A stretch of DNA of 19,330 bases from Macrostomum lignano (GCA_002269645.1 NIVC01002182.1:67493-86822); one strand, 5' to 3'. Counted from the first letter of the stretch, positions 8,095 to 19,330 are shown. Program-made: numbers and translations. Notes: generated from the sequence alone by a model not told the origin.

Positions 8095-8546
8095 GCTTCA
8101 TTGTCGCTCGGAAGTACCATAGACAAAATATTTGGTTGAACTTAATTGTATGGCCATAGGCTGCTTATCATATTTTTTGGCCATAGACTGTTTTCAAGGA
8201 AGAAAGGCCCAGAGGGGAGAGAGGGTGGGGAAAATGAAAGCTCTCAAATAACCCTGCTAGCAAGAAAAGCATCATGGTAGACCAAGTGCATCTGATTAAC
8301 TGGGCTAACTTGCCGATTAGTTGTCTTTCTGGTTAGAGTCAGTAGGGTATGCGACTTGGAAGCAGCTGGACATTCTATGGCCGATATTATGGCGACAACC
8401 GGCCAGAAGTGCGAAAAGATCGCCGTTTGCCGATATCTCTCATCAGACGTGGCAAGGTGCTAAAGAAGTGCAGCGACGCCTTAAGAAAGGTACTGGACAG
8501 GGAGAAAAACTCTATTCTACACCGAATTCAGATGGCCATGTTACTA

Positions 8547-9854
8547 CGAGGGATACTCTAAAAGTTTTGCAATTCGACTATTTAAAGTTAATTTTGCCAA
8601 ACTTTTCTATTACAATCCTTCAAAGTAGGCTCCCCGGAACTGCAAACACTTGTGCGCTCGTCCGAGCCACTTGTTCATCAAGCCCTGGAAGTCTTCAATT
8701 GGGATGCCGTCAATCGCCTCCTTCGCCGCCTGCTCCAGCTCCTCGTCGGACTGAAACCTGCGCCCCCTAAGCGACTTTTTGATTTCTGGAAAGAGCCAGA
8801 AGTCGCAGGGGGCGAGGTCTGGTGAGTAGGCCGGGTGTGGTAGCGTTGAAATGCCCTCTTGGTCCAGGAACGCTCGAGTTGCAGCAGCCGTGTGGGCGGG
8901 GGCGTTGTCATGGTGAAGCTTCCGCCCTCGCATTCCCGTCCTTGGCGCCCTCTGGGTCACGCTGTCGATCACGACTGGCAAGCACTCTTCAGTGTACCAT
9001 CGAGCAGTGACTGTAGCTTGACCCTCCAGCTTCACCATCGCCACCACGCCTTGTGAGTCGAAGAAGATGGCAAACATCCGCTTGCCCTGGGACCGGGACC
9101 GCCTTGCTTTCAGGGGTCGTTGACCACCTTCCGGCACCCACTCTGCACTGCTGCGCTTTGTCTCGACGTCAAAATGATACAGAAACGTCTCATCACCAGT
9201 GATGACCTCAGAGCGGCGCTGATGGCTCCCGTGCTCATATCGATCGATGAGAAACTGACAGAACTCCATGCGGGCCTGTTTTTGAGCATCTGTCAGGATG
9301 TGGGGTATCCATCGGGCACAAAGCTTCCTGACTCTCAGGTGATCGTGTAGAATCGTATCGACCGCTGCCGATCCAATGCCGACATTCATAGCTAGCATGT
9401 CCGTGGTGATTCGCGGATCCTGATGAATCAGCTCCTGCACTGCAACGATGTTTTCCTCCGTCACTGCTGTCGGAGGTCTCCCGGGCCGGGGGTCGTCAGA
9501 AAAGCTGGTCCTGCCGGCCTGGAACTCGCGGTACCAGCGTGTAACCGTAGCATATGACGGCGCTTGAGCCTCCAATGTTGCCAGTAGCTCGGCATGAGTC
9601 TCAAGCGCCGTGAGCTTTCGCTTGTGGCAGTACCAAATTAGTAGCCGATTCTGCTCACGATTCAATTCCATGGCTGCAGCTGTACAGTTAAGGAGTCTCT
9701 GACTTTGACTGGGGGCTGAGCAGGCGTATATGTATGAATTAACTTGAAAATTGAGGTGGTGACTATGTACATGTTTATTGTACAGAGAGTTGGTTTTGAA
9801 GATTGTGCGACTTGCGCAAGTGGTTGAATTGCAAAACTTTTGGAGTATCCCTCG
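8547..9854 (-). mobile_element. Complete mariner (Tc1/mariner, DD34D) transposon, 1308 bp
   Basis: 29-bp TIRs CGAGGGATACTC(T/C)AAAAGTTTTGCAATTC with one mismatch, and TA target duplications at 8545-8546 and 9855-9856. Confidence 0.97.
8610..9671 (-). CDS. Mariner transposase, 353 aa, intact
   Basis: N-terminal HTH region, WIPHIL, ITGDET, HHDNAPAH and YSPDLAPCDF, with exactly 34 residues between the 2nd and 3rd catalytic Asp. Start MELNRE at 9671. Confidence 0.97.
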   Translation of the reverse strand: MELNREQNRLLIWYCHKRKLTALETHAELLATLEAQAPSYATVTRWYREFQAGRTSFSDDPRPGRPPTAVTEENIVAVQELIHQDPRITTDMLAMNVGIGSAAVDTILHDHLRVRKLCARWIPHILTDAQKQARMEFCQFLIDRYEHGSHQRRSEVITGDETFLYHFDVETKRSSAEWVPEGGQRPLKARRSRSQGKRMFAIFFDSQGVVAMVKLEGQATVTARWYTEECLPVVIDSVTQRAPRTGMRGRKLHHDNAPAHTAAATRAFLDQEGISTLPHPAYSPDLAPCDFWLFPEIKKSLRGRRFQSDEELEQAAKEAIDGIPIEDFQGLMNKWLGRAHKCLQFRGAYFEGL

Positions 9855-10350
9855 TACATACACGAGCGCGAGCCCATCAGCCAGTACAATAGATAGCCCA
9901 GCAGTCAACACAAGCATCTGCCCAGTCAAAATCCAGAGCTCAACGGTCCAGGAGGCGGTCAACTTCGCAAACACTCATCAAAATGGCAAAAACATCCTCG
10001 TCAAGCAAAACTACACGTTCAACCAATGCAGTATGTGAGAATTCATGTGCAACTGACACTACAAGCAAAAATAGTTCCATAGACTTTAGCCCTCTTGAAA
10101 TTTGACTGTAAATTTCCTAGTGTTTCTCATAACATTTTTACTGTGTTTTGTTGTATTGTATTGTTACTGTTTTGTTACTGTATGCTGTTTTTCTAAATTA
10201 ATTGAGGACATTATCCACAAGTCGTGGACATTATCCAGAACGCAAGGACATTATAGAGAAGTGACACTAGAACCACAGGCTATAAAGTGAAATCAAAGTT
10301 GCGACAGTTTTTTACCATAGACAAAACATTATCTAAAAGCACTGACTAGC

Positions 10351-10791
10351 AACAATGGTAGATTGTCGCGCACTCGCACGCGCACTCGCTACGCGCACTC
10401 GTGTTTGGCCATTATTTCAGCCCCTTACCTACTACGCAACGTCATTGTCTATAAGACACAGCCTGGCCATTATTTCAGCGTGCCGGAAACGGTCATTATT
10501 TCAGGGTAAGAGTCTGCGTGCGTGCGACTGCGTAAAGAGGGCCCGGTGGTTGGGCCATAGACTATAAATAAAAAAGCTGTTGGGCCATAGACTATAAATG
10601 AATAAGCTGATGATAGGCTTGAGCTGACGAGAAGTAGAGAAATAATGGCCAGTTGAGTTTGTCATTACGCTAGGCTGTGTCTTCTGGACAATGGGCCTCA
10701 AACGGCGCCCATTATATAAAATAAGCAAAAATAGGCAATCTGATTTCATATAAAATAATAGCCATTTAATAAGCTGTCTATGGTTAGAATG
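10351..10791. repeat. Modular foldback/site cluster (AACAATGGTAGATTG end motif, GCTACGC core, TGGCCATTATTTCAG repeats, tandem CCATAGAC sites)
   Basis: 10393-10504 is homologous to 15450-15590, and ~10638-10693 to ~16270-16326. There is a 2 x 30-bp tandem at 10549-10608. Confidence 0.85.
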
Positions 10792-11045
10792 TCCTCGGCC
10801 ACACTCAATGGTCCTCGGCTCGCTTCGCTCGCCTCGAATACGCTAATATCAATACGCTTATATGATATTATATCATATAATCTCCTCGAAATAAGGAGCT
10901 TTATATGGAACATTGAAGTGAACAAGCCAACAGTATATTTAGCAACAGACACATGCAACTGACATAACAACAAAACTTAGCATACTCAACTTGTATGATC
11001 CAGTTCAAACAGTTTACGGATGAGAGTTCTTACATGTACATCCTC

Positions 11046-12398
11046 TTAGTCACGGAACGTTATTTCCAGCCGCCCATCTTCAACGACAATAGACTTGACA
11101 CCCAGACGACGCCCGTCTGTGGCTCGATCGGTGCCGACTTGCACAGACGAATCACCAGATGACGCCGAGACAGCGCCACTTTGCTCAGACGATTCACCAG
11201 ACGAGGCCGATGATCCAGACGAGACAGAAACGTTCTGCAGAACATCAGAGGCCAGTCGAGCAACTTTAGCTGATGGCCCAATGTATCGCTCCATCGCAGA
11301 TGAAGAATGACCGGTAAAACGAGCAATTTCTGGCCTTGACATCCCAGCATCCCGAAGCGTGGTGGCACAAGTTTTTCTTAGACTCTGATTCGTGTAGACA
11401 CCTGAACTTGGTTCATTAGACAAACAACCAGATTCCGAACAACAGCTTCCAAACTGTGGAGACCAAGCGATTGATTTTTGGTACCACCTGCCGGAGCGAA
11501 TAATGTCTTCCTTGCGGATGCATGACAGAAATAGCTGCGGCTTAGAGCAGTCTGGCGGACGATAGCCAACGTACTTCTTATACAGACACACTAGGCAACG
11601 AACATGACCGGGAGTGTGAAACACAGTGTTTTGCTTGAGCGGCCTATTAAATGTCTTCAAACCAAAAGGCCTTGTCTTTGAAACGGAACTCTCTTTGTAC
11701 ACGAGAACCTCGTCCGTGCCCCCGATAGAAAGCTGCAGCTGCTTGTTGATTTCGAGTCTGTGTAACTCACTACCGCCTCGCAATCTGAAGACTTTACTGA
11801 TCATGAATATTAGGGTGTTGAGTAGCACCTTCGGAGAATCATCTCCTAACAAGCCTCGCTGCCATAAGATATTCTCACTATCCGAAGCAATTGGCGCAGT
11901 TGCCCGTCCACCATTGAGTTGTCCTTCCCGGGCGGTCTCTCGCATGGCAGCATCTAGCGCACGTCGCGTTTCAGCGAACTCGGCGTCAGTCCAGATGGAA
12001 AGAGTCCGTTTAAGTCCGTAAACAAAGTGGTGTTGGATCATGGAGACTAGATCTTTGAGGGTGCCAGGTGGAAACTTTTCTCCGTTCTCTTTACGAACTT
12101 CGAACACAAAATACTGGAGCAAATGATTCAAGTCAGATTTCGTGAGATCCTCGGTTGGCTTGAGAACCATGAGTCCCGACTCTTCGCCTGCCAATTGACG
12201 ATTGACGCGCGTCTCTTTCCATAGATTGAATAACTTCATTGCCCATTTTTCCTTCGCTCTGGTAGCGGCAGGCAAACTTTCGTCGATTCGTTTTTTTAGA
12301 GCAGCTTCGTCCAGGAACTCAGCAGAAACTCGAGTTGTCGACTCAACTCCGAAAGCAGCAAAGAAAGCGTCAAAATTGAAGTCTTCTAAACCTTCCAT
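11046..12398 (-). CDS. Crypton-type tyrosine recombinase (DUF3504; KIAA1958/ZMYM/QRICH1-related), near complete
   Basis: N-terminal TRAKEKWAMKLF..W and FVFEVRKENGEKFPPGTL. Catalytic set LRGGSE (R), SKT (K), TNQSLR (HxxR with H>Q), TGH and MERY (Y). Probably carries two compensating frameshifts at ~11405-11479. Confidence 0.88.
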   Translation of the reverse strand: MEGLEDFNFDAFFAAFGVESTTRVSAEFLDEAALKKRIDESLPAATRAKEKWAMKLFNLWKETRVNRQLAGEESGLMVLKPTEDLTKSDLNHLLQYFVFEVRKENGEKFPPGTLKDLVSMIQHHFVYGLKRTLSIWTDAEFAETRRALDAAMRETAREGQLNGGRATAPIASDSENILWQRGLLGDDSPKVLLNTLIFMISKVFRLRGGSELHRLEINKQLQLSIGGTDEVLVYKESSVSKTRPFGLKTFNRPLKQNTVFHTPGHVRCLVCLYKKYVGYRPPDCSKPQLFLSCIRKEDIIRSGRWYQKSIAWSPQFGSCCSESGCLSNEPSSGVYTNQSLRKTCATTLRDAGMSRPEIARFTGHSSSAMERYIGPSAKVARLASDVLQNVSVSSGSSASSGESSEQSGAVSASSGDSSVQVGTDRATDGRRLGVKSIVVEDGRLEITFRD

Positions 12399-12683
12399 AT
12401 TGTATTATTGATTCTAGTTCGAAGAAAAAGCGACTTTGAATTCGGCTTTTACGTTTTGCCACCACTGACTGACTGGCTGCTTCGTGACTGTATCTTCGTG
12501 AGAAATTTATTTATTTGTCTATGGTCGGAATCAAATGGTCTAAACCTATATGTCTATCAATCAGATGGGATGCCCCCGAAAAATAAGCAATCGAATTTCA
12601 TATATGATAAACGCCGTTAAATTCATCATAGTCTATGGTTAGAATGCGACTTAAACGGCGTTTATGTAGGAGATAAAGCACGC

Positions 12684-12923
12684 TTTTCCGGGCACTATTT
12701 TTTAATGCCCGAGAGCCGAAGGCCGAGAATCGAGAGCCGGGTGCCAACATTTGGTGGGGTAATTCAAGGCGGGTGTGGCGTCCCCCCAGTCCATGGACTG
12801 AACAGCCGAAAGGCTCGAGGGTATTAAGTAAATAGTGCCCGGAAAACAGCGTATTTTATCTCTTATAGAGCATGGTGATGCCTCATTGAATTTTCGGGCT
12901 TTAAGTAAATAATGCCCGGAAAA
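12684..12923. repeat. Small foldback with 17-bp inverted repeats enclosing a SINE-3'-like segment
   Basis: TTTTCCGGGCACTATTT (12684-12700) is inverted at 12830-12846 and, with one mismatch, at 12907-12923. 12741-12808 matches the reverse complement of ~14176-14243. Confidence 0.8.
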
Positions 12924-13031
12924 TTTTGATGTCGTCGATAGACAAAGCTGCTGCTTCTTATTCTGCTGCTGTCTGTTGAAGACGAAGGCTATATCAGCCA
13001 TCAAACTAACAGCCATTTTTTTTTACAGCGT

Positions 13032-13668
13032 GTGCCCTATTCTGCAGCAATGAATTCACGTATTACAAATCCGCTAGTTGACTATACCGATGATTTCATG
13101 GGTGGATTCGATCCCAATGTATTGCTTCAATCTGACATCGACACTGTGTTAAATGCTGGTGGTGACCTTCGCAGCCACCATGACATCGCCAGAATAATTG
13201 GAGCAGCGGCAGCAGAGGAGTCGAATGGACCGAATGGGCCGAGTGCCAACCGCTTTGGCCCGTCTTTGACGTTCAACGATGCCATGGTGCTTGACAGCAG
13301 CACAAATTCGAAGAAGACCGGAGAAAGAGACAAGTGGGCTAGTAACGTTTTCAGCGCGTGGGTGACTGCCCAATTCCGCCAACTTCCAACAACAGTGGGT
13401 GAACTGAGCCACGACCAACTGCGTGAGTTGCTGCCGCTCTTTTTTCACGAAGTGCGCAAACAAAATGGAGAGCGCTATCCTGCTGGGTCGCTCGTCTCTC
13501 TCGCGGCTGGACTACAGCGTGGTGCGAGTAGCTCCGGTCGACTTTTTTCGTAGTCCCGACTTTAAAGTGATTACGGAGTCCATTGATGCTGCAATGAAGA
13601 TTTCTACGAAGGAAGGAAACGGCTTGAAGCGCAAGAGTGCTGAAGAAACAAAGAAACAAAGAAACTAG
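13032..13668 (+). pseudogene. Second Crypton-type recombinase, N-terminal DNA-binding half only, frameshift near 13520
   Basis: KWASNVFSAW, FFHEVRKQNGERYPAGSL..L..GLQR, then in the next frame VDFFRSPDFKVITESIDAAMK. It stops before any catalytic motif. Confidence 0.85.
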
Positions 13669-13925
13669 GCCAAAGAAACAAAATCAGGGGGGTATTATTC
13701 TATACTTCAGCCTAACAATTTTGTGGTAAGTAGATATGAGTATGAGTAGAAATAGTGGAAAAGGGTTGATTTGGCCATAGACTATAAGAAAAAAACTTTG
13801 TCTACTGTATGACTTGGATCAAGTGGGGTTTCGAATTTGGCAGATATGATTCTGAATTCAAATTATTTGTTGAAGTTTGCACTTTATAGCTTTCTGCTTT
13901 TTAACAGTTCTTTTCCTTCATAACT

Positions 13926-14165
13926 ATGGTGCTTATTAACTGGTCCAATCTTCCAGTGGACAGCCTAAACATTGTGAGTAGTAATGAATTTGAGTTTCTT
14001 TCTGAGATTAGTTTAAACAACCATCAAACCGATGCCGACTTGAGCGAGTTCATCAAGTGGATTGAAAATCCTGCGGCTGTCTGGAGAGCTTTTGATTACA
14101 CCTGTACCAATCGGGCCAGATGTGCAGCCGACGGCACAGCCGCAGCTTTTGCGCGGCGCATTTGA
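13926..14165 (+). CDS. Short ORF (79 aa) beginning with the LINWxNLP motif; function unknown
   Basis: MVLINWSNLPVDSL starts 151 bp downstream of a CCATAGAC site. A GTGAGT donor-like sequence lies near 13974, so the product may be spliced. Confidence 0.4.
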   Translation: MVLINWSNLPVDSLNIVSSNEFEFLSEISLNNHQTDADLSEFIKWIENPAAVWRAFDYTCTNRARCAADGTAAAFARRI

Positions 14166-14172
14166 AGGCTGC

Positions 14173-14373
14173 CTACGGCTGTTCAGTCCATGGACTGGGA
14201 GGACGCCAGACCCACCCTAATTTACCCCAGCTAATGCTGGTACCCATTTACAGCTGGGTGAACTGAAGCTATGCAAAATTAAATGTCTTGCAAAAAGACA
14301 CAAATTGTATTAGTGGATTCGGGAGTCGACCTTAAAGTCGCGAATCCGACGCTCTAACCACTAGGCTACAACC
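14173..14373 (-). mobile_element. tRNA-derived SINE with a CORE-like central domain
   Basis: Minus strand starts GGTTGTAGCCTAGTGGTTAGAGCG (A box) with a degenerate B box, then GTGTCTTTTTGCAAGACATTTAA...CAGCTGTAAATGGG, which resembles the MIR/CORE consensus. Confidence 0.65.
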
Positions 14374-15395
14374 CCTTACTTGGCTACATGAATTGTAGGC
14401 TATATTTAATTACAAGGATAGCTACTCGTGATGATATGAAGTCTCATTACTGCTTTCTATGAAAAATTCCAATGATCAGCTACTTGAGAAGCTGTGATCA
14501 CTGTCATCGTGTGGTTATAACAGTAGCTATCCAATACTTGCATATTAATAATTACTACGTTTAGTTCGTAACCGTTTAGAAGCTGTTCGTAACTTTTGCC
14601 ATCGGCTACGTAACATGACTGGAAAAATACTGGTCGAAACTGGATTGACTGCCGTTCTGCATGTTCAGCTACTTCATAGAAATAAGAATTTTTAATTACC
14701 ATTCTGCGCCGCGAACTCAGGCTTGTTAATTTGTCACTGTCGCTACACGATCATTGACTTCGTCGATCGACCTGGCACACGTCGGAACTTGTTCGGAAGT
14801 TCTTGACCTGTCGACTTTCCAATGCAAGCATCATTGCTCAGTAATTGAGCCGTCGACCGAAGCCTGGAGCCGGTTGATTTTGGCCTGAGTAGTGGCCTCT
14901 ATATGTGCCAAAATCCTCAGTGTGTCTGTGAATCAAGGATTTCGTACACTAATATAGACATGAATATCATATCGCAAATTGGTTTATTTCCGCTGCTATG
15001 CAAATGATGGCTCAAGATTGATAATACACTAATACAGTTTTAGAGCTGCTACGAACTACGAACTTTGCTCGAACCTGATTCGTATTATCAATTGTTCTGG
15101 GTACAGAAAATCCCACAGAAGCCTAAAGCAATATTGAGATAAACAGATTAATAAGGACTCAGAGACTAAGAAATTTTGCTAGAGCCTCAAGCAATCAGTC
15201 AAGATTAAATTAATTTAACTCCTAGTGCTTCAATGTTGCCCGAGCTAGTTAAGCAGACAATTTTCGCTTGCGGATTTCTTGATGTTGTGCTTCTTTGCCG
15301 GCCAGCAAGGAGACCGCCACCATGAAATTGCGGGGTTGCCCTGTTGATGCCAATTAACGAAGACTCAGCCGTTATACCATCGGCAGGGCAGTACA

Positions 15396-16407
15396 TGGTA
15401 GATTGCGTAGTAGGTAAGGGACTGAAATAATGGCCATAAACACGAGTGCGCACTCGTGTTTATGGCCATTATTTCAGCCCCTTACCTACTACGCAACGTC
15501 ATTGTCTATAAGACACATAGAGGCCATTATTTCAGCATAGCGTAGTCTGGTGGCCATTATTTCAGCGTGCCGGAAGCGGTCATTATTTCACACTTTTTAT
15601 CACGCTGTAATTGGCTGTTTTGAGAGTTATTTTACCCATAGACGACTGAGATGTGTGTCTTAGTTTGACCATAGACACACTGTGATGAGTGCTGATTTTG
15701 CTTGCGTCTTGCAAGAAATCAGGAAAGCGGGTAGTACGAGTGAAATCTATTTGTGTAGTCAAACAACTATGACTGGTGCATCTCGTCAAACAGCACCGCT
15801 TATTAATTGGAAAAATCTTCTTGTCGACGACTGAACGAACCGTGCGACCTATGCTTCAGTGGAGAATACACAAGAGATGCGGGTGAAGCATGGTAAGTGT
15901 AATATATCAACATTGTAAGTGGTAAATTAGTGGCTATATAAATGGCTATAGTAACTGATTTTTTTACAATTTCCATTAATCTGCAGGTCGGATGGATTCG
16001 GAACGCGCAGCTCGATTCTTTGAGAACTGCCACTTCAAGAATTGCACGTTTCAGTTTTAATGAGCAACTTCTGATGAGCAGTCCATGACTACTGTTGTTT
16101 TTGTGCTTAATTCGCGCGTTTTCCATTGTTTTTTAGCTAAAAATGTCTTGACTATCCTGTTTTTAGTGTATTCCAGAATGTCATGTAGACTGTTTGCGAT
16201 TATTCCCTTATGCCAGTTAATATATGAATATTTTAACTAATCGTCTATGGTTCAAACGTCTGCTAAAGCTGAAATAATGGCCAGTTGAGTTTGTCATTAC
16301 GCCAGGCTGTGTCTTCTGGACAATGGCCATAGACACTCGCGCGCTACGCGCGCTCGTGTTTTGGCCATTATTTACCTCCGCTACCCATATAGCAATCTAC
16401 CATTGTT
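15396..16407. mobile_element. ~1 kb non-autonomous element with ~55-60 bp imperfect terminal inverted repeats and a 94-bp palindrome at 15403-15496
   Basis: The left end ATGGTAGATTGC...AAATAATGGCCATAAACACGAGTGCG mirrors the right end at ~16348-16403. It contains CCATAGAC sites at 15636, 15669, 16243 (reverse) and 16327. Confidence 0.7.
15769..16060 (+). pseudogene. Two-exon mini-gene (65 codons) with LINWxNL motif and Crypton-like NCxFxNCTF tail; one in-frame TGA
   Basis: Exon 15769-15892, GTAAGT...CTGCAG intron 15893-15986, exon 15987-16060. The spliced frame reads MTGASRQTAPLINWKNLLVDD*TNRATYASVENTQEMRVKHGRMDSERAARFFENCHFKNCTFQF*. Confidence 0.5.
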
Positions 16408-17709
16408 AGGACCTTTTCGCTTTCGACGTCGCTATTGTCAACTGAAGACAGCTCATCCGCAGACACAAGCTGGGAAAATTAGTACAGATAGGTGTAAGGT
16501 GGGAAGGTAGTTTAATATGAATTAAGTCGGTTTTCTAAAGTTACATGCGTGGTACGTTTATATTTAGCTACCATATGCCACAAAACGTATGTAAAAGAAG
16601 CAGGCAAATTCTTGGGAAGTATAATCATTTCCGCAAAAAGCTCATTAGTATTTCTTAAAAGCATAAGTTAGCAGCATAACTTACCGACAATGGTTGGAAC
16701 TTGTTTCTGTTGTTTATAGTATATAGCTCGTACTTGTAGTACTTTATATAGTAATTGTCAGATACATAATATTGATTAATATTGTTAATGCAAATAGCTG
16801 TGCGTATCTCTTTCTAGAAAGTTCAATAAATATCCAATACAGTATCGTAACGATATATCTATGGTTGTTAGTTCATATCGCAAATACGCTAATACTTTAA
16901 GTGCCTCCCCAAACTGCTCAAGTTTTTTCATCTTGTGTACTTTTTGGTTAAAACTGATAAAATATACTTAATTAAAAGAAGCAAATTTCAACAGTTTCTC
17001 TGCCCAGCAATGTTTCTCCGGCAAATTTTCTTCAAAAGCTTTGATGCTGTCTCGCACCTTCCGGAGGCAGTCAACTCCTCGGCAATATTTTTGGCGGCCT
17101 TCAGTTCAGAAAAACTTTCCGCTACTTGTATTTCCACTACCGTAGACTCTTTTTTGGCAAATGAGATCTTTAATTCGATGGGTCCTAAGGTCCTAAGGAT
17201 TCTTCAGAATCAATTTGGCTCTCATGAGAGGAGGTTTAAGCCCCCATTAAGTATCGCAAATTAGTAAGGTGCGATCTAAAAAATAAACAAATGCATTTTT
17301 GGAAAGAGAAGAAATTGTTGCACTAGGTAGTTTTTTCATGAAGAACCACTCTACCTCTTTTGAAATTGTTAGCAGGGAAGGAACGAGAGCAATGTATTTC
17401 ATTTAAGCTATGCCTCGCTTTTTCAAACCAATGATAAAAGCGTACGAGCCAGCCAAAAAGTGAACTGTGAGGAACAGAATCATAAAATTTACATTTGACG
17501 TACCATATAATTCTTTATAATAGAACCTGGACACTAAGCTGTTTTTGGGAAGCGTACGAACTATTTGGGAGAGCATCTGCCCCAATAGAATACAGTGTTT
17601 TTATGCCTTTTTGCATTGAGCTATCTCTTTTTGCAGCAATTACGCTCATATCTTTCAATTGCATTCCATTTTTAATTTAATAACTAATACATTTTAGGCA
17701 GTTAAAAAA

Positions 17710-17710
<1 letters not shown>

Positions 17711-17808
<98 letters not shown>

Positions 17809-17871
17809 TAGTGTCTGTCTGTCTGTCTTAGTGTCTGTCTGTCTGTCTTAGTGTCTGTCTGTCTGTCTTAG

Positions 17872-17904
<33 letters not shown>

Positions 17905-18011
17905 TAGTGTCTGTCTTAGTGTCTGTCTGTCTGTCTTAGTGTCTGTCTGTCTGTCTTAGTGTCTGTCTTAGTGTCTGTCTGTCTGTCTTAGTGTCTGTCT
18001 GTCTGTCTTAG

Positions 18012-18052
<41 letters not shown>

Positions 18053-18111
18053 TAGTGTCTGTCTTAGTGTCTGTCTGTCTGTCTGTCTGTCTGTCTTAGT
18101 GTCTGTCTTAG

Positions 18112-18172
<61 letters not shown>

Positions 18173-18195
18173 TAGTGTCTGTCTGTCTGTCTTAG

Positions 18196-18250
<55 letters not shown>

Positions 18251-18251
18251 G

Positions 18252-18300
<49 letters not shown>

Positions 18301-18399
18301 TTGTGTCTGTCTTAGTGTCTGTCTGTCTGTCTGTCTGTCTGTCTTAGTGTCTGTCTTAGTGTCTGTCTGTCTGTCTTAGTGTCTGTCTGTCTGTCTTAG

Positions 18400-18472
<73 letters not shown>

Positions 18473-18555
18473 TAGTGTCTGTCTGTCTGTCTTAGTGTCT
18501 GTCTGTCTGTCTTAGTGTCTGTCTGTCTGTCTTAGTGTCTGTCTGTCTGTCTTAG

Positions 18556-18598
<43 letters not shown>
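17711..18598. repeat. ~890-bp (CTGT)n microsatellite interspersed with CTTAGT variant units
   Basis: Direct inspection; it often forms a 20-bp unit CTTAGTGTCTGTCTGTCTGT. Confidence 0.99.
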
Positions 18599-18599
<1 letters not shown>

Positions 18600-18905
18600 C
18601 TGTTTTGTCAGTGCATCCACACCGTCCCTGTACGCACGAATCGCGTCCTCAACCGTGGGAAATCTCTGTCCACGAAGCCCGGCCTTCACCTTCGGATAAC
18701 AGAAAAAAATCACACGGAGCCAGGTCGGGCGAGTAGGGCGGGTGTCCGACCACGGAAACATGATTTTCGGCCAAGAACGTGATGGTTTGCTGCGCCGTGT
18801 GCGAACTCGCGTTGTCGTGGTGCAGGCGAAGGCCGCGGATTCCGCGTTTGGGACGCCGCTCCTGCCACGCCTGCAGCACCTGCGGCAGGCAGACTGTGAC
18901 GCAAG
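18598..18905 (-). pseudogene. Mariner transposase fragment (second, diverged family), truncated at both ends
   Basis: VTVCLPQVL...LHHDNASSH...HPPYSPDLAPCDFFL, a frameshift near 18697, then YPKVKAGLRGQRF. DD34D spacing is kept and no TIRs are seen. Confidence 0.92.
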
Positions 18906-19330
18906 GACCACTGCACTCTCCCTCTTTATACTCCACATTCCACATTATAAAATGACATTCCACACTTAGTAACCACCAATCTATTGGTTATAAATAGCCT
19001 TACAGTTACCTAATTTTATGCTTTGTTTCAGAATGTTTCATGTTTTGATCCAAAGTTTCTACTGATCTTGCATTTCGCCTTTATTTGTGTTTGTTCATTT
19101 TTCATGCATGTTGTCATAATTTTTTCTGGTACATTTTTTCAATAAATGGCTGCCAGTAGCTACCCGACTATTTAAACATTAAGATTTTTTTCAAATGAGA
19201 TCTCGTACAATGACATTGTGTTAGAAATTCACCTATAAACCTTTACTTAATGATTTTTCTACAATTTACGCGCATGTCTAACATCTGTAGACAGTAAGTG
19301 GCAGATAAACAGAATCGACTGTACGTGTTC

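What the first reader, a model, noticed from the sequence alone, without database searches (positions are those of the whole stretch)
8292..15834. Three dispersed mini-ORFs share an unannotated peptide motif LINWxNL(P/L)
Seen: LINWANLPISCL (8292-8327), LINWSNLPVDSL (13932-13967) and LINWKNLLVDD* (15799-15834). All are on the + strand, each near the start of a short ORF downstream of a CCATAGAC site. Codons differ synonymously (CTG/CTT, AAC/AAT, TTG/CTT, CCG/CCA, GTG/GTC) and the flanks are unalignable, so conservation looks protein-level. Two of the three end in an NxTF-type Cys/Asn tail. I do not recognise the motif. Inference: either a family of small accessory cargo proteins (a directionality factor or repressor) or the N-terminus of a recombinase subfamily kept in deletion derivatives.
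Basis: partly seen in the sequence, partly recalled or inferred. Interest (0 to 1): 0.75.

Follow-up and report, generated by a model that had tools for sequence, protein, structure and literature searches.

The report
Leftover starts of recombinase transposon genes
The three LINWxNL peptides are the first codons of a Crypton-like tyrosine-recombinase transposon gene, surviving in two internally deleted copies and one truncated copy; this is ordinary transposon decay, though the CCATAGAC motif in front of each copy is a conserved and still unexplained feature of these elements.

Summary
LINW.NL occurs three times in the six-frame translation against 0.0005 expected, each 6-10 codons after an ATG and 93-151 nt after a CCATAGAC.

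It is not a family of small proteins. An exhaustive HMMER search matched ORF B (13926-14165) to residues 1-51 of a 456-aa protein (63% identity, E 3e-10). Relatives, including a Macrostomum lignano protein starting MPLINWKNLPVDSL, model as two-domain Cre-like recombinases with the R/K/HxxR/Y catalytic pattern.

- **Copy A** joins codons 1-16 directly to codons 350-397, out of frame, and is split by a mariner.
- **Copy C** joins codons 1-12 to codons 426-449, plus the conserved intron and last exon (FFENCHFKNCTFQF*).
- **Copy B** keeps codons 1-51 only.

The 'NxTF tail' is the recombinase C-terminus.

CCATAGAC occurs 15 times in the window against 0.36 expected. It lies 93-190 nt upstream of 8/8 LINW-type copies across the window, M. 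lignano and unnamed assemblies, and upstream of none of 5 neighbouring host genes. Whether it is a promoter element, a recombinase site or both is unresolved.

This is a new member of a known kind, of modest interest.

The parts
8117..8188 (+). Two CCATAGAC sites (8117-8124, 8181-8188) upstream of copy A
8274..8336 (+). Copy A, 5' remnant: ATG plus 19 codons (MVDQVHLINWANLPISCLSG) then TAG. Matches codons 3-16 of the full-length recombinase.
8332..8478 (+). Copy A, 3' remnant in a different frame: VRVSRVCDLEAAGHSMADIMATTGQKCEKIAVCRYLS. Matches residues 350-397 of P0009, the second half of the HxxR...Y catalytic box, with an internal stop.
   Evidence: 51% identity, E 1.3e-8
8545..9856 (-). mariner element inserted into copy A: 39-nt terminal inverted repeats, TA at both ends, transposase on the - strand
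   Evidence: I6; HTH_48, DDE_3, Transposase_1
9859..10038 (+). Copy A, C-terminal tail resuming after the mariner (...VKQNYTFNQCSM*)
10077..10084 (+). CCATAGAC site 39 nt after the stop of copy A
10727..10837 (-). Conserved non-coding block containing the CCATAGAC at 10783(-). It is 81-83% identical to the region upstream of type-1 genes in L001 and L004. A degenerate second copy lies at 12579-12646.
11046..12398 (-). Intact 450-aa QRICH1 + DUF3504 Crypton-like gene ('type 1'), a different lineage from the LINW type
12517..12638 (-). Two CCATAGAC sites (12517-12524, 12631-12638), 126 and 240 nt upstream of the type-1 ATG
13032..13668 (+). Truncated and frameshifted 'type 2' Crypton-like gene. 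Matches residues 3-160 of the 463-aa M. lignano gene L003:5034-6425.
13775..13782 (+). CCATAGAC site followed by TATAAG, 151 nt upstream of the ORF B ATG
13926..14165 (+). Copy B (79-aa ORF). Codons 1-51 match residues 1-51 of P0009 at 63%, and DNA homology to L008 ends at 14090. The last 28 codons are unrelated.
15636..15676 (+). Two CCATAGAC sites (15636-15643, 15669-15676) upstream of copy C
15769..15834 (+). Copy C, 5' remnant: MTGASRQTAPLINWKNLLVDD then TGA. Matches codons 3-12 of the recombinase.
15841..15892 (+). Copy C, penultimate-exon remnant in the same frame (RATYASVENTQEMRVKH). Matches P0009 residues 426-446.
15893..15986 (+). Conserved last intron (GTAAGT...CAG), at the same place as in the full-length relative L008
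15987..16060 (+). Copy C, last exon: (G)RMDSERAARFFENCHFKNCTFQF*, 21 of 24 residues identical to L008
16243..16334 (.). Outward-facing site pair, GTCTATGG (16243-16250) and CCATAGAC (16327-16334), 76 nt apart and 3' of copy C

Best explanation
LINWxNL(P/L) is the extreme N-terminus of one lineage of Crypton-like tyrosine-recombinase (YR) transposon proteins. I call this lineage 'type 3'; it is related to the QRICH1/DUF3504 proteins.

Full-length members are about 450 aa. They consist of M-x-LINWxxLPVDSLxGV..E..FLSELS..H..D..L..FI, an acidic linker, a two-domain Cre-like recombinase, and a C-terminal F-x-N-C-x-F-x-x-C-T-F-x-F tail.

The window holds no intact type-3 gene, only three relics:
- **Copy A** is an internal-deletion derivative: codons 1-16 are joined out of frame to codons 350 onward, it was later split by a mariner, and it carries stops.
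- **Copy C** has a larger internal deletion: codons 1-12 are joined to codons 426 to the end, keeping the last intron and exon, with an in-frame TGA at the joint.
- **Copy B** is a 5' fragment of codons 1-51.

Inferred: the start of the gene survives because deletion derivatives of DNA transposons keep both ends of the element. In these compact elements the coding sequence starts about 100-190 nt from the 5' cis region marked by CCATAGAC, and ends close to the 3' end.

The relics sit in a cluster with an intact type-1 gene and a truncated type-2 gene of related lineages.

Inferred, and much less certain (about 0.5): the CCATAGAC motif (extended TTTGRR-CCATAGAC-W) is a cis element of the elements themselves. 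It would be a recombinase recognition or crossover sequence, possibly doubling as a promoter element, rather than a host promoter motif.
For: **Homology to full-length recombinases.**
- ORF B matches residues 1-51 of P0009 (456 aa) in an exhaustive search of 1.84 billion proteins: E 3.3e-10, 63% identity. By tblastn the E-value is 4.7e-16.
- The same tblastn places P0009 350-397 at 8332-8478 (E 1.3e-8), directly abutting A's N-terminal piece, and P0009 426-449 at 15844-15906.
- blastn of L008 1354-1627 against 15844-16108 gives 67% identity, E 4e-27.
- The spliced last exon is 21/24 identical between the window and L008.
- Fourteen family members were retrieved, among them M. lignano P0016, 'MPLINWKNLPVDSLDGV...FANCLFDGCTFKF', which UniRef names a Tyr recombinase domain-containing protein.

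**Recombinase identity.**
- The AlphaFold model of P0016 matches Cre over about 330 columns (Foldseek E 3e-9, TM 0.65-0.69).
- The family profile hits XerA (E 0.001).
- R, K, HxxR and Y are conserved across the family.

**Protein-level selection.**
- Wobble-position variation appears in eight DNA copies of the motif.
- dN/dS is 0.18 for the B N-terminus and 0.08 for the C last exon, each against L008.

**The same decay pattern elsewhere.**
- M. lignano P0012 (L011) is likewise N-terminus plus C-tail. P0015 (L010) and an ORF at L003:9141-9500 are N-terminus only.
- Non-autonomous Cryptons that keep the 5' 438 bp and 3' 260 bp are documented (PMC3212892).

**CCATAGAC sites.**
- A same-strand site lies 93-190 nt upstream of the ATG in 8/8 type-3 copies that have enough upstream sequence.
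- None of 5 neighbouring host genes has one within 500 nt (with 36, 58, 70).
- Repeat homology breaks exactly at the 5' edge of the site in two comparisons.
Against: - No intact type-3 gene is in the window, so the link to an active element rests on relatives from other assemblies. The closest is 63% identical over 51 aa.
- The source genome could not be searched, so copy number and true element ends are unknown.
- ORF B is open for 79 codons with its own ATG and upstream site. An M. lignano N-terminus-only ORF of 120 codons is also open, so a stand-alone truncated product is not excluded.
- For the site: type-2 genes lack a same-orientation site upstream (0/2), and two of five type-1 genes have only the variant CCATAGAA.
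- Downstream of the genes, sites occur in either orientation, so no simple terminal-repeat rule fits.
- No transcription-start or binding data exist.
Confidence: 0.9

Rival explanations
1. The mini-ORFs, or at least ORF B and its M. lignano counterparts, encode stand-alone small proteins made of the acidic N-terminal module. These would act as regulators of the elements, for example by poisoning recombinase multimers like truncated-transposase repressors, or as a directionality factor.
For: - ORF B is open for 79 codons with its own ATG and an upstream CCATAGAC/TATAAG.
- L003:9141-9500 is an open 120-codon ORF with the same N-terminal module at only 28% identity (BLASTP 2e-6). It was the top tblastn hit in the window and has the same site 123 nt upstream.
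- P0015 is another N-terminus-only gene model.
Against: - A and C stop after 20 and 21 codons and are plainly deletion joints.
- B's similarity ends at codon 51-55, followed by unrelated sequence.
- The low dN/dS is explained by descent from full-length genes.
- The module is strongly acidic and modelled with pLDDT below 55, so there is no sign of a DNA-binding fold.
- No expression data exist.
Confidence: 0.07
2. The peptides are first exons of a host multi-exon gene family. The W-x-x-L-P-x-D-x-L pattern resembles the start of an F-box, and GTGAGT follows at 13974 in copy B.
For: There is a superficial resemblance to F-box N-termini (from memory). Splice-donor-like GTGAGT and GGTTAG follow the motif in B and A.
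Against: - There is no Pfam F-box or other hit even at E up to 10.
- Homology to P0009, P0016 and the M. lignano ORF runs straight through the putative donor to codon 51.
- The putative donor phases differ between A and B.
Confidence: 0.01
3. The shared 21-36 nt is a non-coding DNA motif, such as a protein-binding site, that only happens to translate alike.
For: B and C share 40 nt at 75% at the DNA level.
Against: Eight copies differ mainly at synonymous positions while the amino acids stay fixed. The motif is the start of a 50-residue region conserved in proteins down to 33% overall identity.
Confidence: 0.01

Closest known systems
Crypton DNA transposons of the DUF3504-encoding (CryptonA-type) kind (Kojima and Jurka 2011, PMC3212892; Glomhopper, PMC13465315)
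   Same: - They are single-gene elements of about 1.6-2 kb encoding a tyrosine recombinase.
- They have a QRICH1-like N-terminal domain and a DUF3504/YR C-terminal domain.
- They have no reverse transcriptase.
- Introns are present.
- They occur in animal genomes.
   Different: - The LINW lineage falls below the Pfam thresholds for QRICH1, DUF3504 and Phage_integrase.
- It carries an unannotated acidic 70-residue N-terminal extension and a Cys/Asn-rich C-terminal tail.
- It has Q instead of H/W at the fifth catalytic position.
- Three related lineages are clustered together and share an 8-14-nt flanking motif. Kojima and Jurka found no terminal repeats in animal Cryptons.
Non-autonomous Crypton derivatives (CryptonI-1N1_RPro, CryptonA-1N1/1N2_OL; PMC3212892)
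   Same: They are internal deletions that keep a few hundred bases of each end of the autonomous element. Copies A and C, and M. lignano P0012, have exactly this layout.
   Different: Only single decayed copies are seen here. Family copy number and identity to an autonomous master could not be measured.
Cre / XerA / IntI tyrosine recombinases
   Same: The two-domain fold (Foldseek E 3e-9 to Cre) and the R, K, HxxR, Y catalytic pattern.
   Different: Only 12-16% identity. These are eukaryotic, intron-containing genes with extra N- and C-terminal extensions.
Recombinase core sites and integron attC sites (resemblance only)
   Same: Inverted copies of a short conserved sequence (GTCTATGG ... CCATAGAC) bound variable, sometimes strongly hairpin-forming spacers of 5-99 nt. 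One case is a perfect 15-nt inverted repeat with a 5-nt spacer.
   Different: No evidence of recombination at these sequences. Spacer lengths are mostly far longer than a 6-8-bp crossover region. Sites also occur singly and as direct pairs.
Truncated-transposase repressors such as the P-element KP protein (resemblance only, from memory)
   Same: N-terminus-only products arise from internally deleted copies.
   Different: No evidence that the short ORFs here are expressed or functional. The module is acidic and unlikely to bind DNA.

Membership tests
Tyrosine recombinase (Cre/Int superfamily) | Catalytic R ... K ... HxxR ... H/W ... Y pattern | tested here: met
   Full-length relatives conserve GERG/GLRG (R), KN (K), HCIR (HxxR) and RY (Y). 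The fifth position is Q in the LINW clade and H in P0023-P0027. In the window, copy A keeps only the R of HxxR through the Y and is broken; B and C lack the catalytic region.
Tyrosine recombinase (Cre/Int superfamily) | Two-domain Cre-like fold | tested here: met
   The P0016 model (mean pLDDT 71.6, core 80-94) matches Cre chains at E 3e-9, TM 0.65-0.69, over about 330 columns. The family profile hits XerA at E 0.001.
Tyrosine recombinase (Cre/Int superfamily) | Pfam Phage_integrase (PF00589) above the gathering score | tested here: inconclusive
   P0009 scores 15.7 bits and P0016/P0017 score 17.1 bits against a cutoff of 27.1. The more distant member P0024 scores 27.1, exactly at the cutoff.
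DUF3504 / QRICH1-domain (CryptonA-type) proteins | Pfam PF12012 and PF25561 matches | tested here: inconclusive
   - The type-1 gene at 11046-12398 passes both (62.5 and 33.1 bits).
- LINW-type proteins are sub-threshold for QRICH1 (12-24 bits) and have no DUF3504 hit.
- P0024-P0028, at 29-34% identity to them, carry the domains.
- tblastn links type 3 to type 1 at 22-24% identity, E down to 5e-17.
Crypton (as opposed to DIRS/Ngaro YR retrotransposons) | YR gene alone, without reverse transcriptase or other long ORFs | tested here: met
   Between 7300 and 17000 the only long ORFs are the mariner transposase, type 1, truncated type 2 and antisense ORFs. L008 (1.77 kb) and L001 (2.3 kb) hold only the YR gene. 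In L012 no other gene is called within 3.4 kb.
Crypton | Short (4-6 bp) direct repeats at both termini, matching the target | tested here: inconclusive
   Element ends could not be defined from single copies. CCATAGAC contains the complement of TATGG, the shared terminus of CryptonS. Two repeat-homology breakpoints fall at its 5' edge. No consistent direct or inverted arrangement brackets the genes.
Non-autonomous (internal-deletion) transposon derivative | Both ends of the autonomous element retained, interior missing | tested here: met
   A has codons 3-16 and then 350-397 plus the tail. C has codons 3-12 and then 426 to the end, with the intron and last exon. B fails this test and is a 5' fragment only.
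Non-autonomous (internal-deletion) transposon derivative | Multiple near-identical copies mobilised in trans | not testable with these tools
   The source genome is not in any searchable collection: the window's type-1 protein has no identical entry, and ORF B has no word-sharing hit.
F-box proteins (considered, rejected) | Pfam F-box / F-box-like match | tested here: not met
   No Pfam family at E up to 10 for ORF B.

The most novel reading that the evidence does not exclude
CCATAGAC (TTTGRR-CCATAGAC-W) may be the long-missing recombinase recognition or crossover sequence of animal Cryptons, shared by three diverged recombinase lineages that therefore insert next to one another and build clusters. 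In that reading, the hairpin-forming GTCTATGG-spacer-CCATAGAC units are joined-end (circle-junction or att-like) sites. A further possibility is that N-terminus-only ORFs such as ORF B are expressed as regulators.
Probability: 0.2. Interest if true: 0.6.

Novelty: new member of a known kind. Interest (0 to 1): 0.3.

Why it matters
For the finding itself, it matters little. It turns an apparently new peptide family into decayed copies of a Crypton-like recombinase gene, and it shows how to annotate such fragments: N-terminal LINWxxLPVDSL, C-terminal FxNCxFxxCTFxF.

It does add three things:
- a description of an unannotated N-terminal extension and C-terminal tail in a recombinase lineage that Pfam models miss;
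- evidence that internal-deletion derivatives occur in this lineage;
- a short flanking motif conserved across loci and species.

Animal Crypton termini and recombination sites are poorly defined, so this motif gives a concrete, testable candidate in a laboratory flatworm, Macrostomum lignano.

Tried and rejected
- **F-box or first-exon reading:** rejected, with no Pfam hit and homology running through the putative splice donor.
- **Word-index protein search with ORF B:** no candidate. The exhaustive HMMER search was needed.
- **blastn of the B region against the phage collection:** no match, uninformative.
- **Rfam and tRNA scans of 7300-17000:** only sub-threshold miRNA-model hits on a perfect palindrome, and no tRNA.
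- **Literature:** no paper describes CCATAGAC as a motif, and the M. lignano genome paper has no promoter-motif analysis. One unrelated paper mentions both Macrostomum and Crypton.
- **Metagenome scan for more type-3 loci:** alignment A3 was too diverse. With A4, 526 pattern matches were found but none was confirmed.
- **Simple terminal-repeat rules for the sites:** neither direct repeats nor 8-bp inverted repeats bracketing each gene fit all copies.
- **Homology of the LINW module to the N-terminus of type 2** (NPLVDY...): only E 0.63, not claimed.
- **Structure of the N-terminal 70 residues:** pLDDT below 55, so no fold inference.

Full report
**1. The observation.**
The three translations are exactly as reported. 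A relaxed pattern, [LIVM][LIVM]NW.NL, occurs nowhere else in the six-frame translation. Block-shuffled sequence gives 0.0005 LINW.NL hits per window, so the three copies share descent.

Each motif is in frame with an ATG 6-10 codons upstream (8274, 13926, 15769). Each lies 93-151 nt downstream of a + strand CCATAGAC.

CCATAGAC occurs 15 times against 0.36 expected, always between 7840 and 16334. At the DNA level only B and C align, over 40 nt at 75%.

**2. Surroundings.**

| Coordinates | Strand | Feature |
|---|---|---|
| 1 to about 7300 | | Virus-like genes, including an A32-type packaging ATPase; not examined further and not assembled |
| 8545-9856 | - | mariner with 39-nt inverted repeats and TA at both ends |
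| 11046-12398 | - | Intact 450-aa QRICH1 + DUF3504 gene, here 'type 1' |
| 13032-13668 | + | Truncated, frameshifted relative of a second lineage, 'type 2' |

The full-length type-2 counterpart is the 463-aa M. lignano gene L003:5034-6425, which passes Pfam Phage_integrase at 6e-10.

The closest named relative of type 1 is a Macrostomum lignano protein at 42% identity. Closer ones (up to 56%) come from unnamed SRA assemblies. The window's own proteins are not in the protein collection, so the source genome could not be searched.

**3. What the LINW peptides are.**
A word-index search with ORF B found nothing. An exhaustive HMMER search of 1.84 billion proteins did: residues 1-51 of ORF B match residues 1-51 of P0009, a 456-aa protein (63% identity, E 3.3e-10). 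They also match the N-termini of P0012, P0014 and P0015.

Searching with P0009 returned 14 relatives:
- M. lignano P0016, 449 aa, 'MPLINWKNLPVDSLDGVSSTELDFLSELS...FANCLFDGCTFKF', named a Tyr recombinase domain-containing protein by UniRef.
- More distant members starting MALINFDNIP and MALLNLANVP.

The N-terminal alignment shows a conserved 50-residue module, M-x-LINWxxLPVDSLxGV..E..FLSELS..H..D..L..FI, followed by an acidic linker.

The family is a tyrosine recombinase:
- R, K, HxxR and Y are conserved. Q replaces H at the fifth position in the LINW clade.
- The profile hits XerA.
- The AlphaFold model of P0016 matches Cre over about 330 columns (E 3e-9, TM 0.65-0.69).
- Pfam QRICH1 and Phage_integrase matches are sub-threshold in the LINW clade. 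They reach threshold in P0024.

No Pfam model covers residues 1-70. That stretch is strongly acidic and modelled at low confidence.

**4. Anatomy of the three copies.**
tblastn of P0009 against the window gives the following.

| Copy | Retained from P0009 | Window coordinates | State |
|---|---|---|---|
| B | Residues 1-51 | 13926-14078 | DNA homology to L008 stops at 14090; the last 28 codons are unrelated |
| A | Residues 3-16, then 350-397 in another frame | 8292-8333, then 8332-8478 | Interior deleted (about codons 17-349); internal stop; split by the mariner; tail resumes 9859-10038 |
| C | Residues 3-12, TGA, then 426-449 in the same frame | 15799-15828, then 15844-15906 | Interior deleted (about codons 13-425); keeps the last intron (15893-15986) and last exon |

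The 350-397 piece of copy A reads VRVSRVCDLEAAGHSMADIMATTGQKCEKIAVCRYLS. This is the catalytic box from the R of HxxR to the tyrosine. After the mariner its tail ends ...VKQNYTFNQCSM*.

The last exon of copy C reads (G)RMDSERAARFFENCHFKNCTFQF*. It is 21/24 identical to the spliced last exon of L008, the contig encoding P0009.

So A and C are internal-deletion derivatives that keep both ends of the gene, and B is a 5' fragment.

The same decay occurs in M. lignano:
- P0012 (L011) is N-terminus plus C-tail.
- P0015 (L010) is N-terminus only.
- The 120-codon ORF L003:9141-9500 is also N-terminus only.

**5. Protein-level conservation.**
Eight DNA copies of the motif differ mainly at wobble positions. 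dN/dS is about 0.18 for the B N-terminus against L008, and about 0.08 for the C last exon against L008. This reflects constraint on the ancestral full-length genes. It does not show that the relics are functional.

**6. Why the start of the gene survives (inference).**
Non-autonomous DNA transposons keep the terminal sequences needed in cis. For Cryptons this is documented: CryptonI-1N1_RPro keeps the 5' 438 bp and 3' 260 bp (PMC3212892).

In these compact elements the ATG lies about 100-190 nt from the 5' cis region. Deletions that spare the end therefore spare the first codons.

A and C are also flanked by copies of the same repeated modules. These are 10393-10503 matching 15448-15590, 10639-10694 matching 16271-16326, and 7840-7871 matching 16327-16358. 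This fits members of one non-autonomous family.

**7. The CCATAGAC motif.**
Its extended consensus is TTTGRR-CCATAGAC-W, the same in the window and in M. lignano. Sequence between the site and the ATG is otherwise unalignable.

Position relative to genes:

| Gene class | Exact same-strand site upstream | Note |
|---|---|---|
| Type 3 (LINW) | 8/8, at 93-190 nt from the ATG | A, B, C, L009, L010, L011, L012, L003 small ORF |
| Type 1 | 3/5 | The other two have the variant CCATAGAA |
| Type 2 | 0/2 | |
| Neighbouring host genes in the M. lignano loci | 0/5 within 500 nt | Gene calls |

Other facts:
- Sites cluster around the elements, for example 11 in L003, all within 4017-9907.
- Sites also form a 40-nt satellite in L010.
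- Neighbouring sites are most often outward-facing inverted pairs: 8 of 18 pairs are GTCTATGG-N(5-99)-CCATAGAC, against 2 inward-facing.
- Two of those pairs are strong hairpins, and one is a perfect 15-nt inverted repeat with a 5-nt spacer.
- In two repeat comparisons, homology starts or stops exactly at the 5' edge of the site.
- CCATA is the complement of TATGG, the terminal repeat shared by most CryptonS elements.

Against a simple model, sites downstream of the genes occur in either orientation, and no direct-repeat or inverted-repeat rule fits all copies.

I conclude that the motif is a cis element of these elements rather than a host promoter motif. I put the recombinase-recognition reading, possibly combined with promoter function, at roughly even odds.

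One further feature is unexplained. A 110-nt non-coding block (10727-10837) is 81-83% identical to the region upstream of type-1 genes in L001 and L004, while the coding sequence is only 62-64% identical.

**8. Comparison with known families, and novelty.**
The elements work like, and by fold and catalytic pattern belong with, Crypton tyrosine-recombinase transposons of the DUF3504-encoding kind. The three relics are non-autonomous or truncated derivatives.

The differences are the unannotated acidic N-terminal module and Cys/Asn tail, the sub-threshold Pfam scores, the co-clustering of three lineages, and a shared flanking motif. Animal Cryptons were reported to lack terminal repeats.

This is a new member of a known kind.

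**9. Verdict.**
- Interest is 0.3.
- The most novel reading not excluded is that CCATAGAC is the recombination site of these animal Cryptons, with hairpin units as joined-end sites and possibly truncated N-terminal products as regulators. I give this probability 0.2 and interest 0.6 if true.

Noticed in passing
window 1-7300: Virus-like gene cluster. It has an A32-type packaging ATPase (2076-3035, - strand; Pfam Pox_A32 4.6e-6) and ORFs at 4755-5630, 5658-6041 and 6062-6925 without Pfam hits. It also has a ~600-nt tandem duplication (1289-1890 / 1889-2501) and 21-nt repeats (2920-3044) inside the ATPase ORF. It may be a Polinton/Maverick-like insertion. I did not examine it further or assemble it.
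   Followed up: partly
window 8545-9856: mariner element with 39-nt terminal inverted repeats, TA on both sides and a transposase on the - strand (HTH_48, DDE_3), inserted into recombinase relic A.
   Followed up: yes
window 18552-18975 (-): ORF fragment resembling the C-terminal part of a mariner-type transposase, next to a ~1-kb (TCTG)n array at 17570-18600.
   Followed up: no
window 10727-10837 (and 12579-12646): A 110-nt non-coding block is 81-83% identical to sequence upstream of type-1 recombinase genes in L001 and L004, while the coding sequence is only 62-64% identical. It contains two GCCGAGGAC repeats and a CCATAGAC. Here it lies 3' of the gene, with a degenerate copy 5' of it.
   Followed up: partly
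window 12739-12808 and 14176-14245: 70-nt inverted repeat (86% complementary) enclosing the truncated type-2 gene and ORF B. Its origin is unknown.
   Followed up: no
window 7739-7979 and 15403-15496: Large near-perfect palindromes (119-nt and 47-nt arms) next to the recombinase relics. The second hits miRNA models far below their gathering scores and is best read as a plain hairpin.
   Followed up: partly
window 7362-7653: 81-nt tandem repeat, 3.6 copies, 84% matches.
   Followed up: no
L010 4138-4645 (M. lignano NIVC01000736.1): 40-nt satellite in which every unit contains CCATAGAC. At 4267-4301 the array switches orientation through a perfect 15-nt inverted repeat with a 5-nt spacer (GCCCGAAGTCTATGG GTTGG CCATAGACTTCGGGC).
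   Followed up: partly
L001 2043-2157; L012 9623-9714: Strong hairpins (-75 and -64 kcal/mol) whose stems begin with GTCTATGG / CCATAGAC but whose interiors are unrelated to each other. They lie between recombinase genes.
   Followed up: partly
L003 5034-11326 (M. lignano NIVC01000339.1): The same three lineages (type 2, a type-3-like N-terminal ORF, and type 1) lie together within 6.3 kb, as in the window. This suggests that these elements accumulate next to one another.
   Followed up: partly
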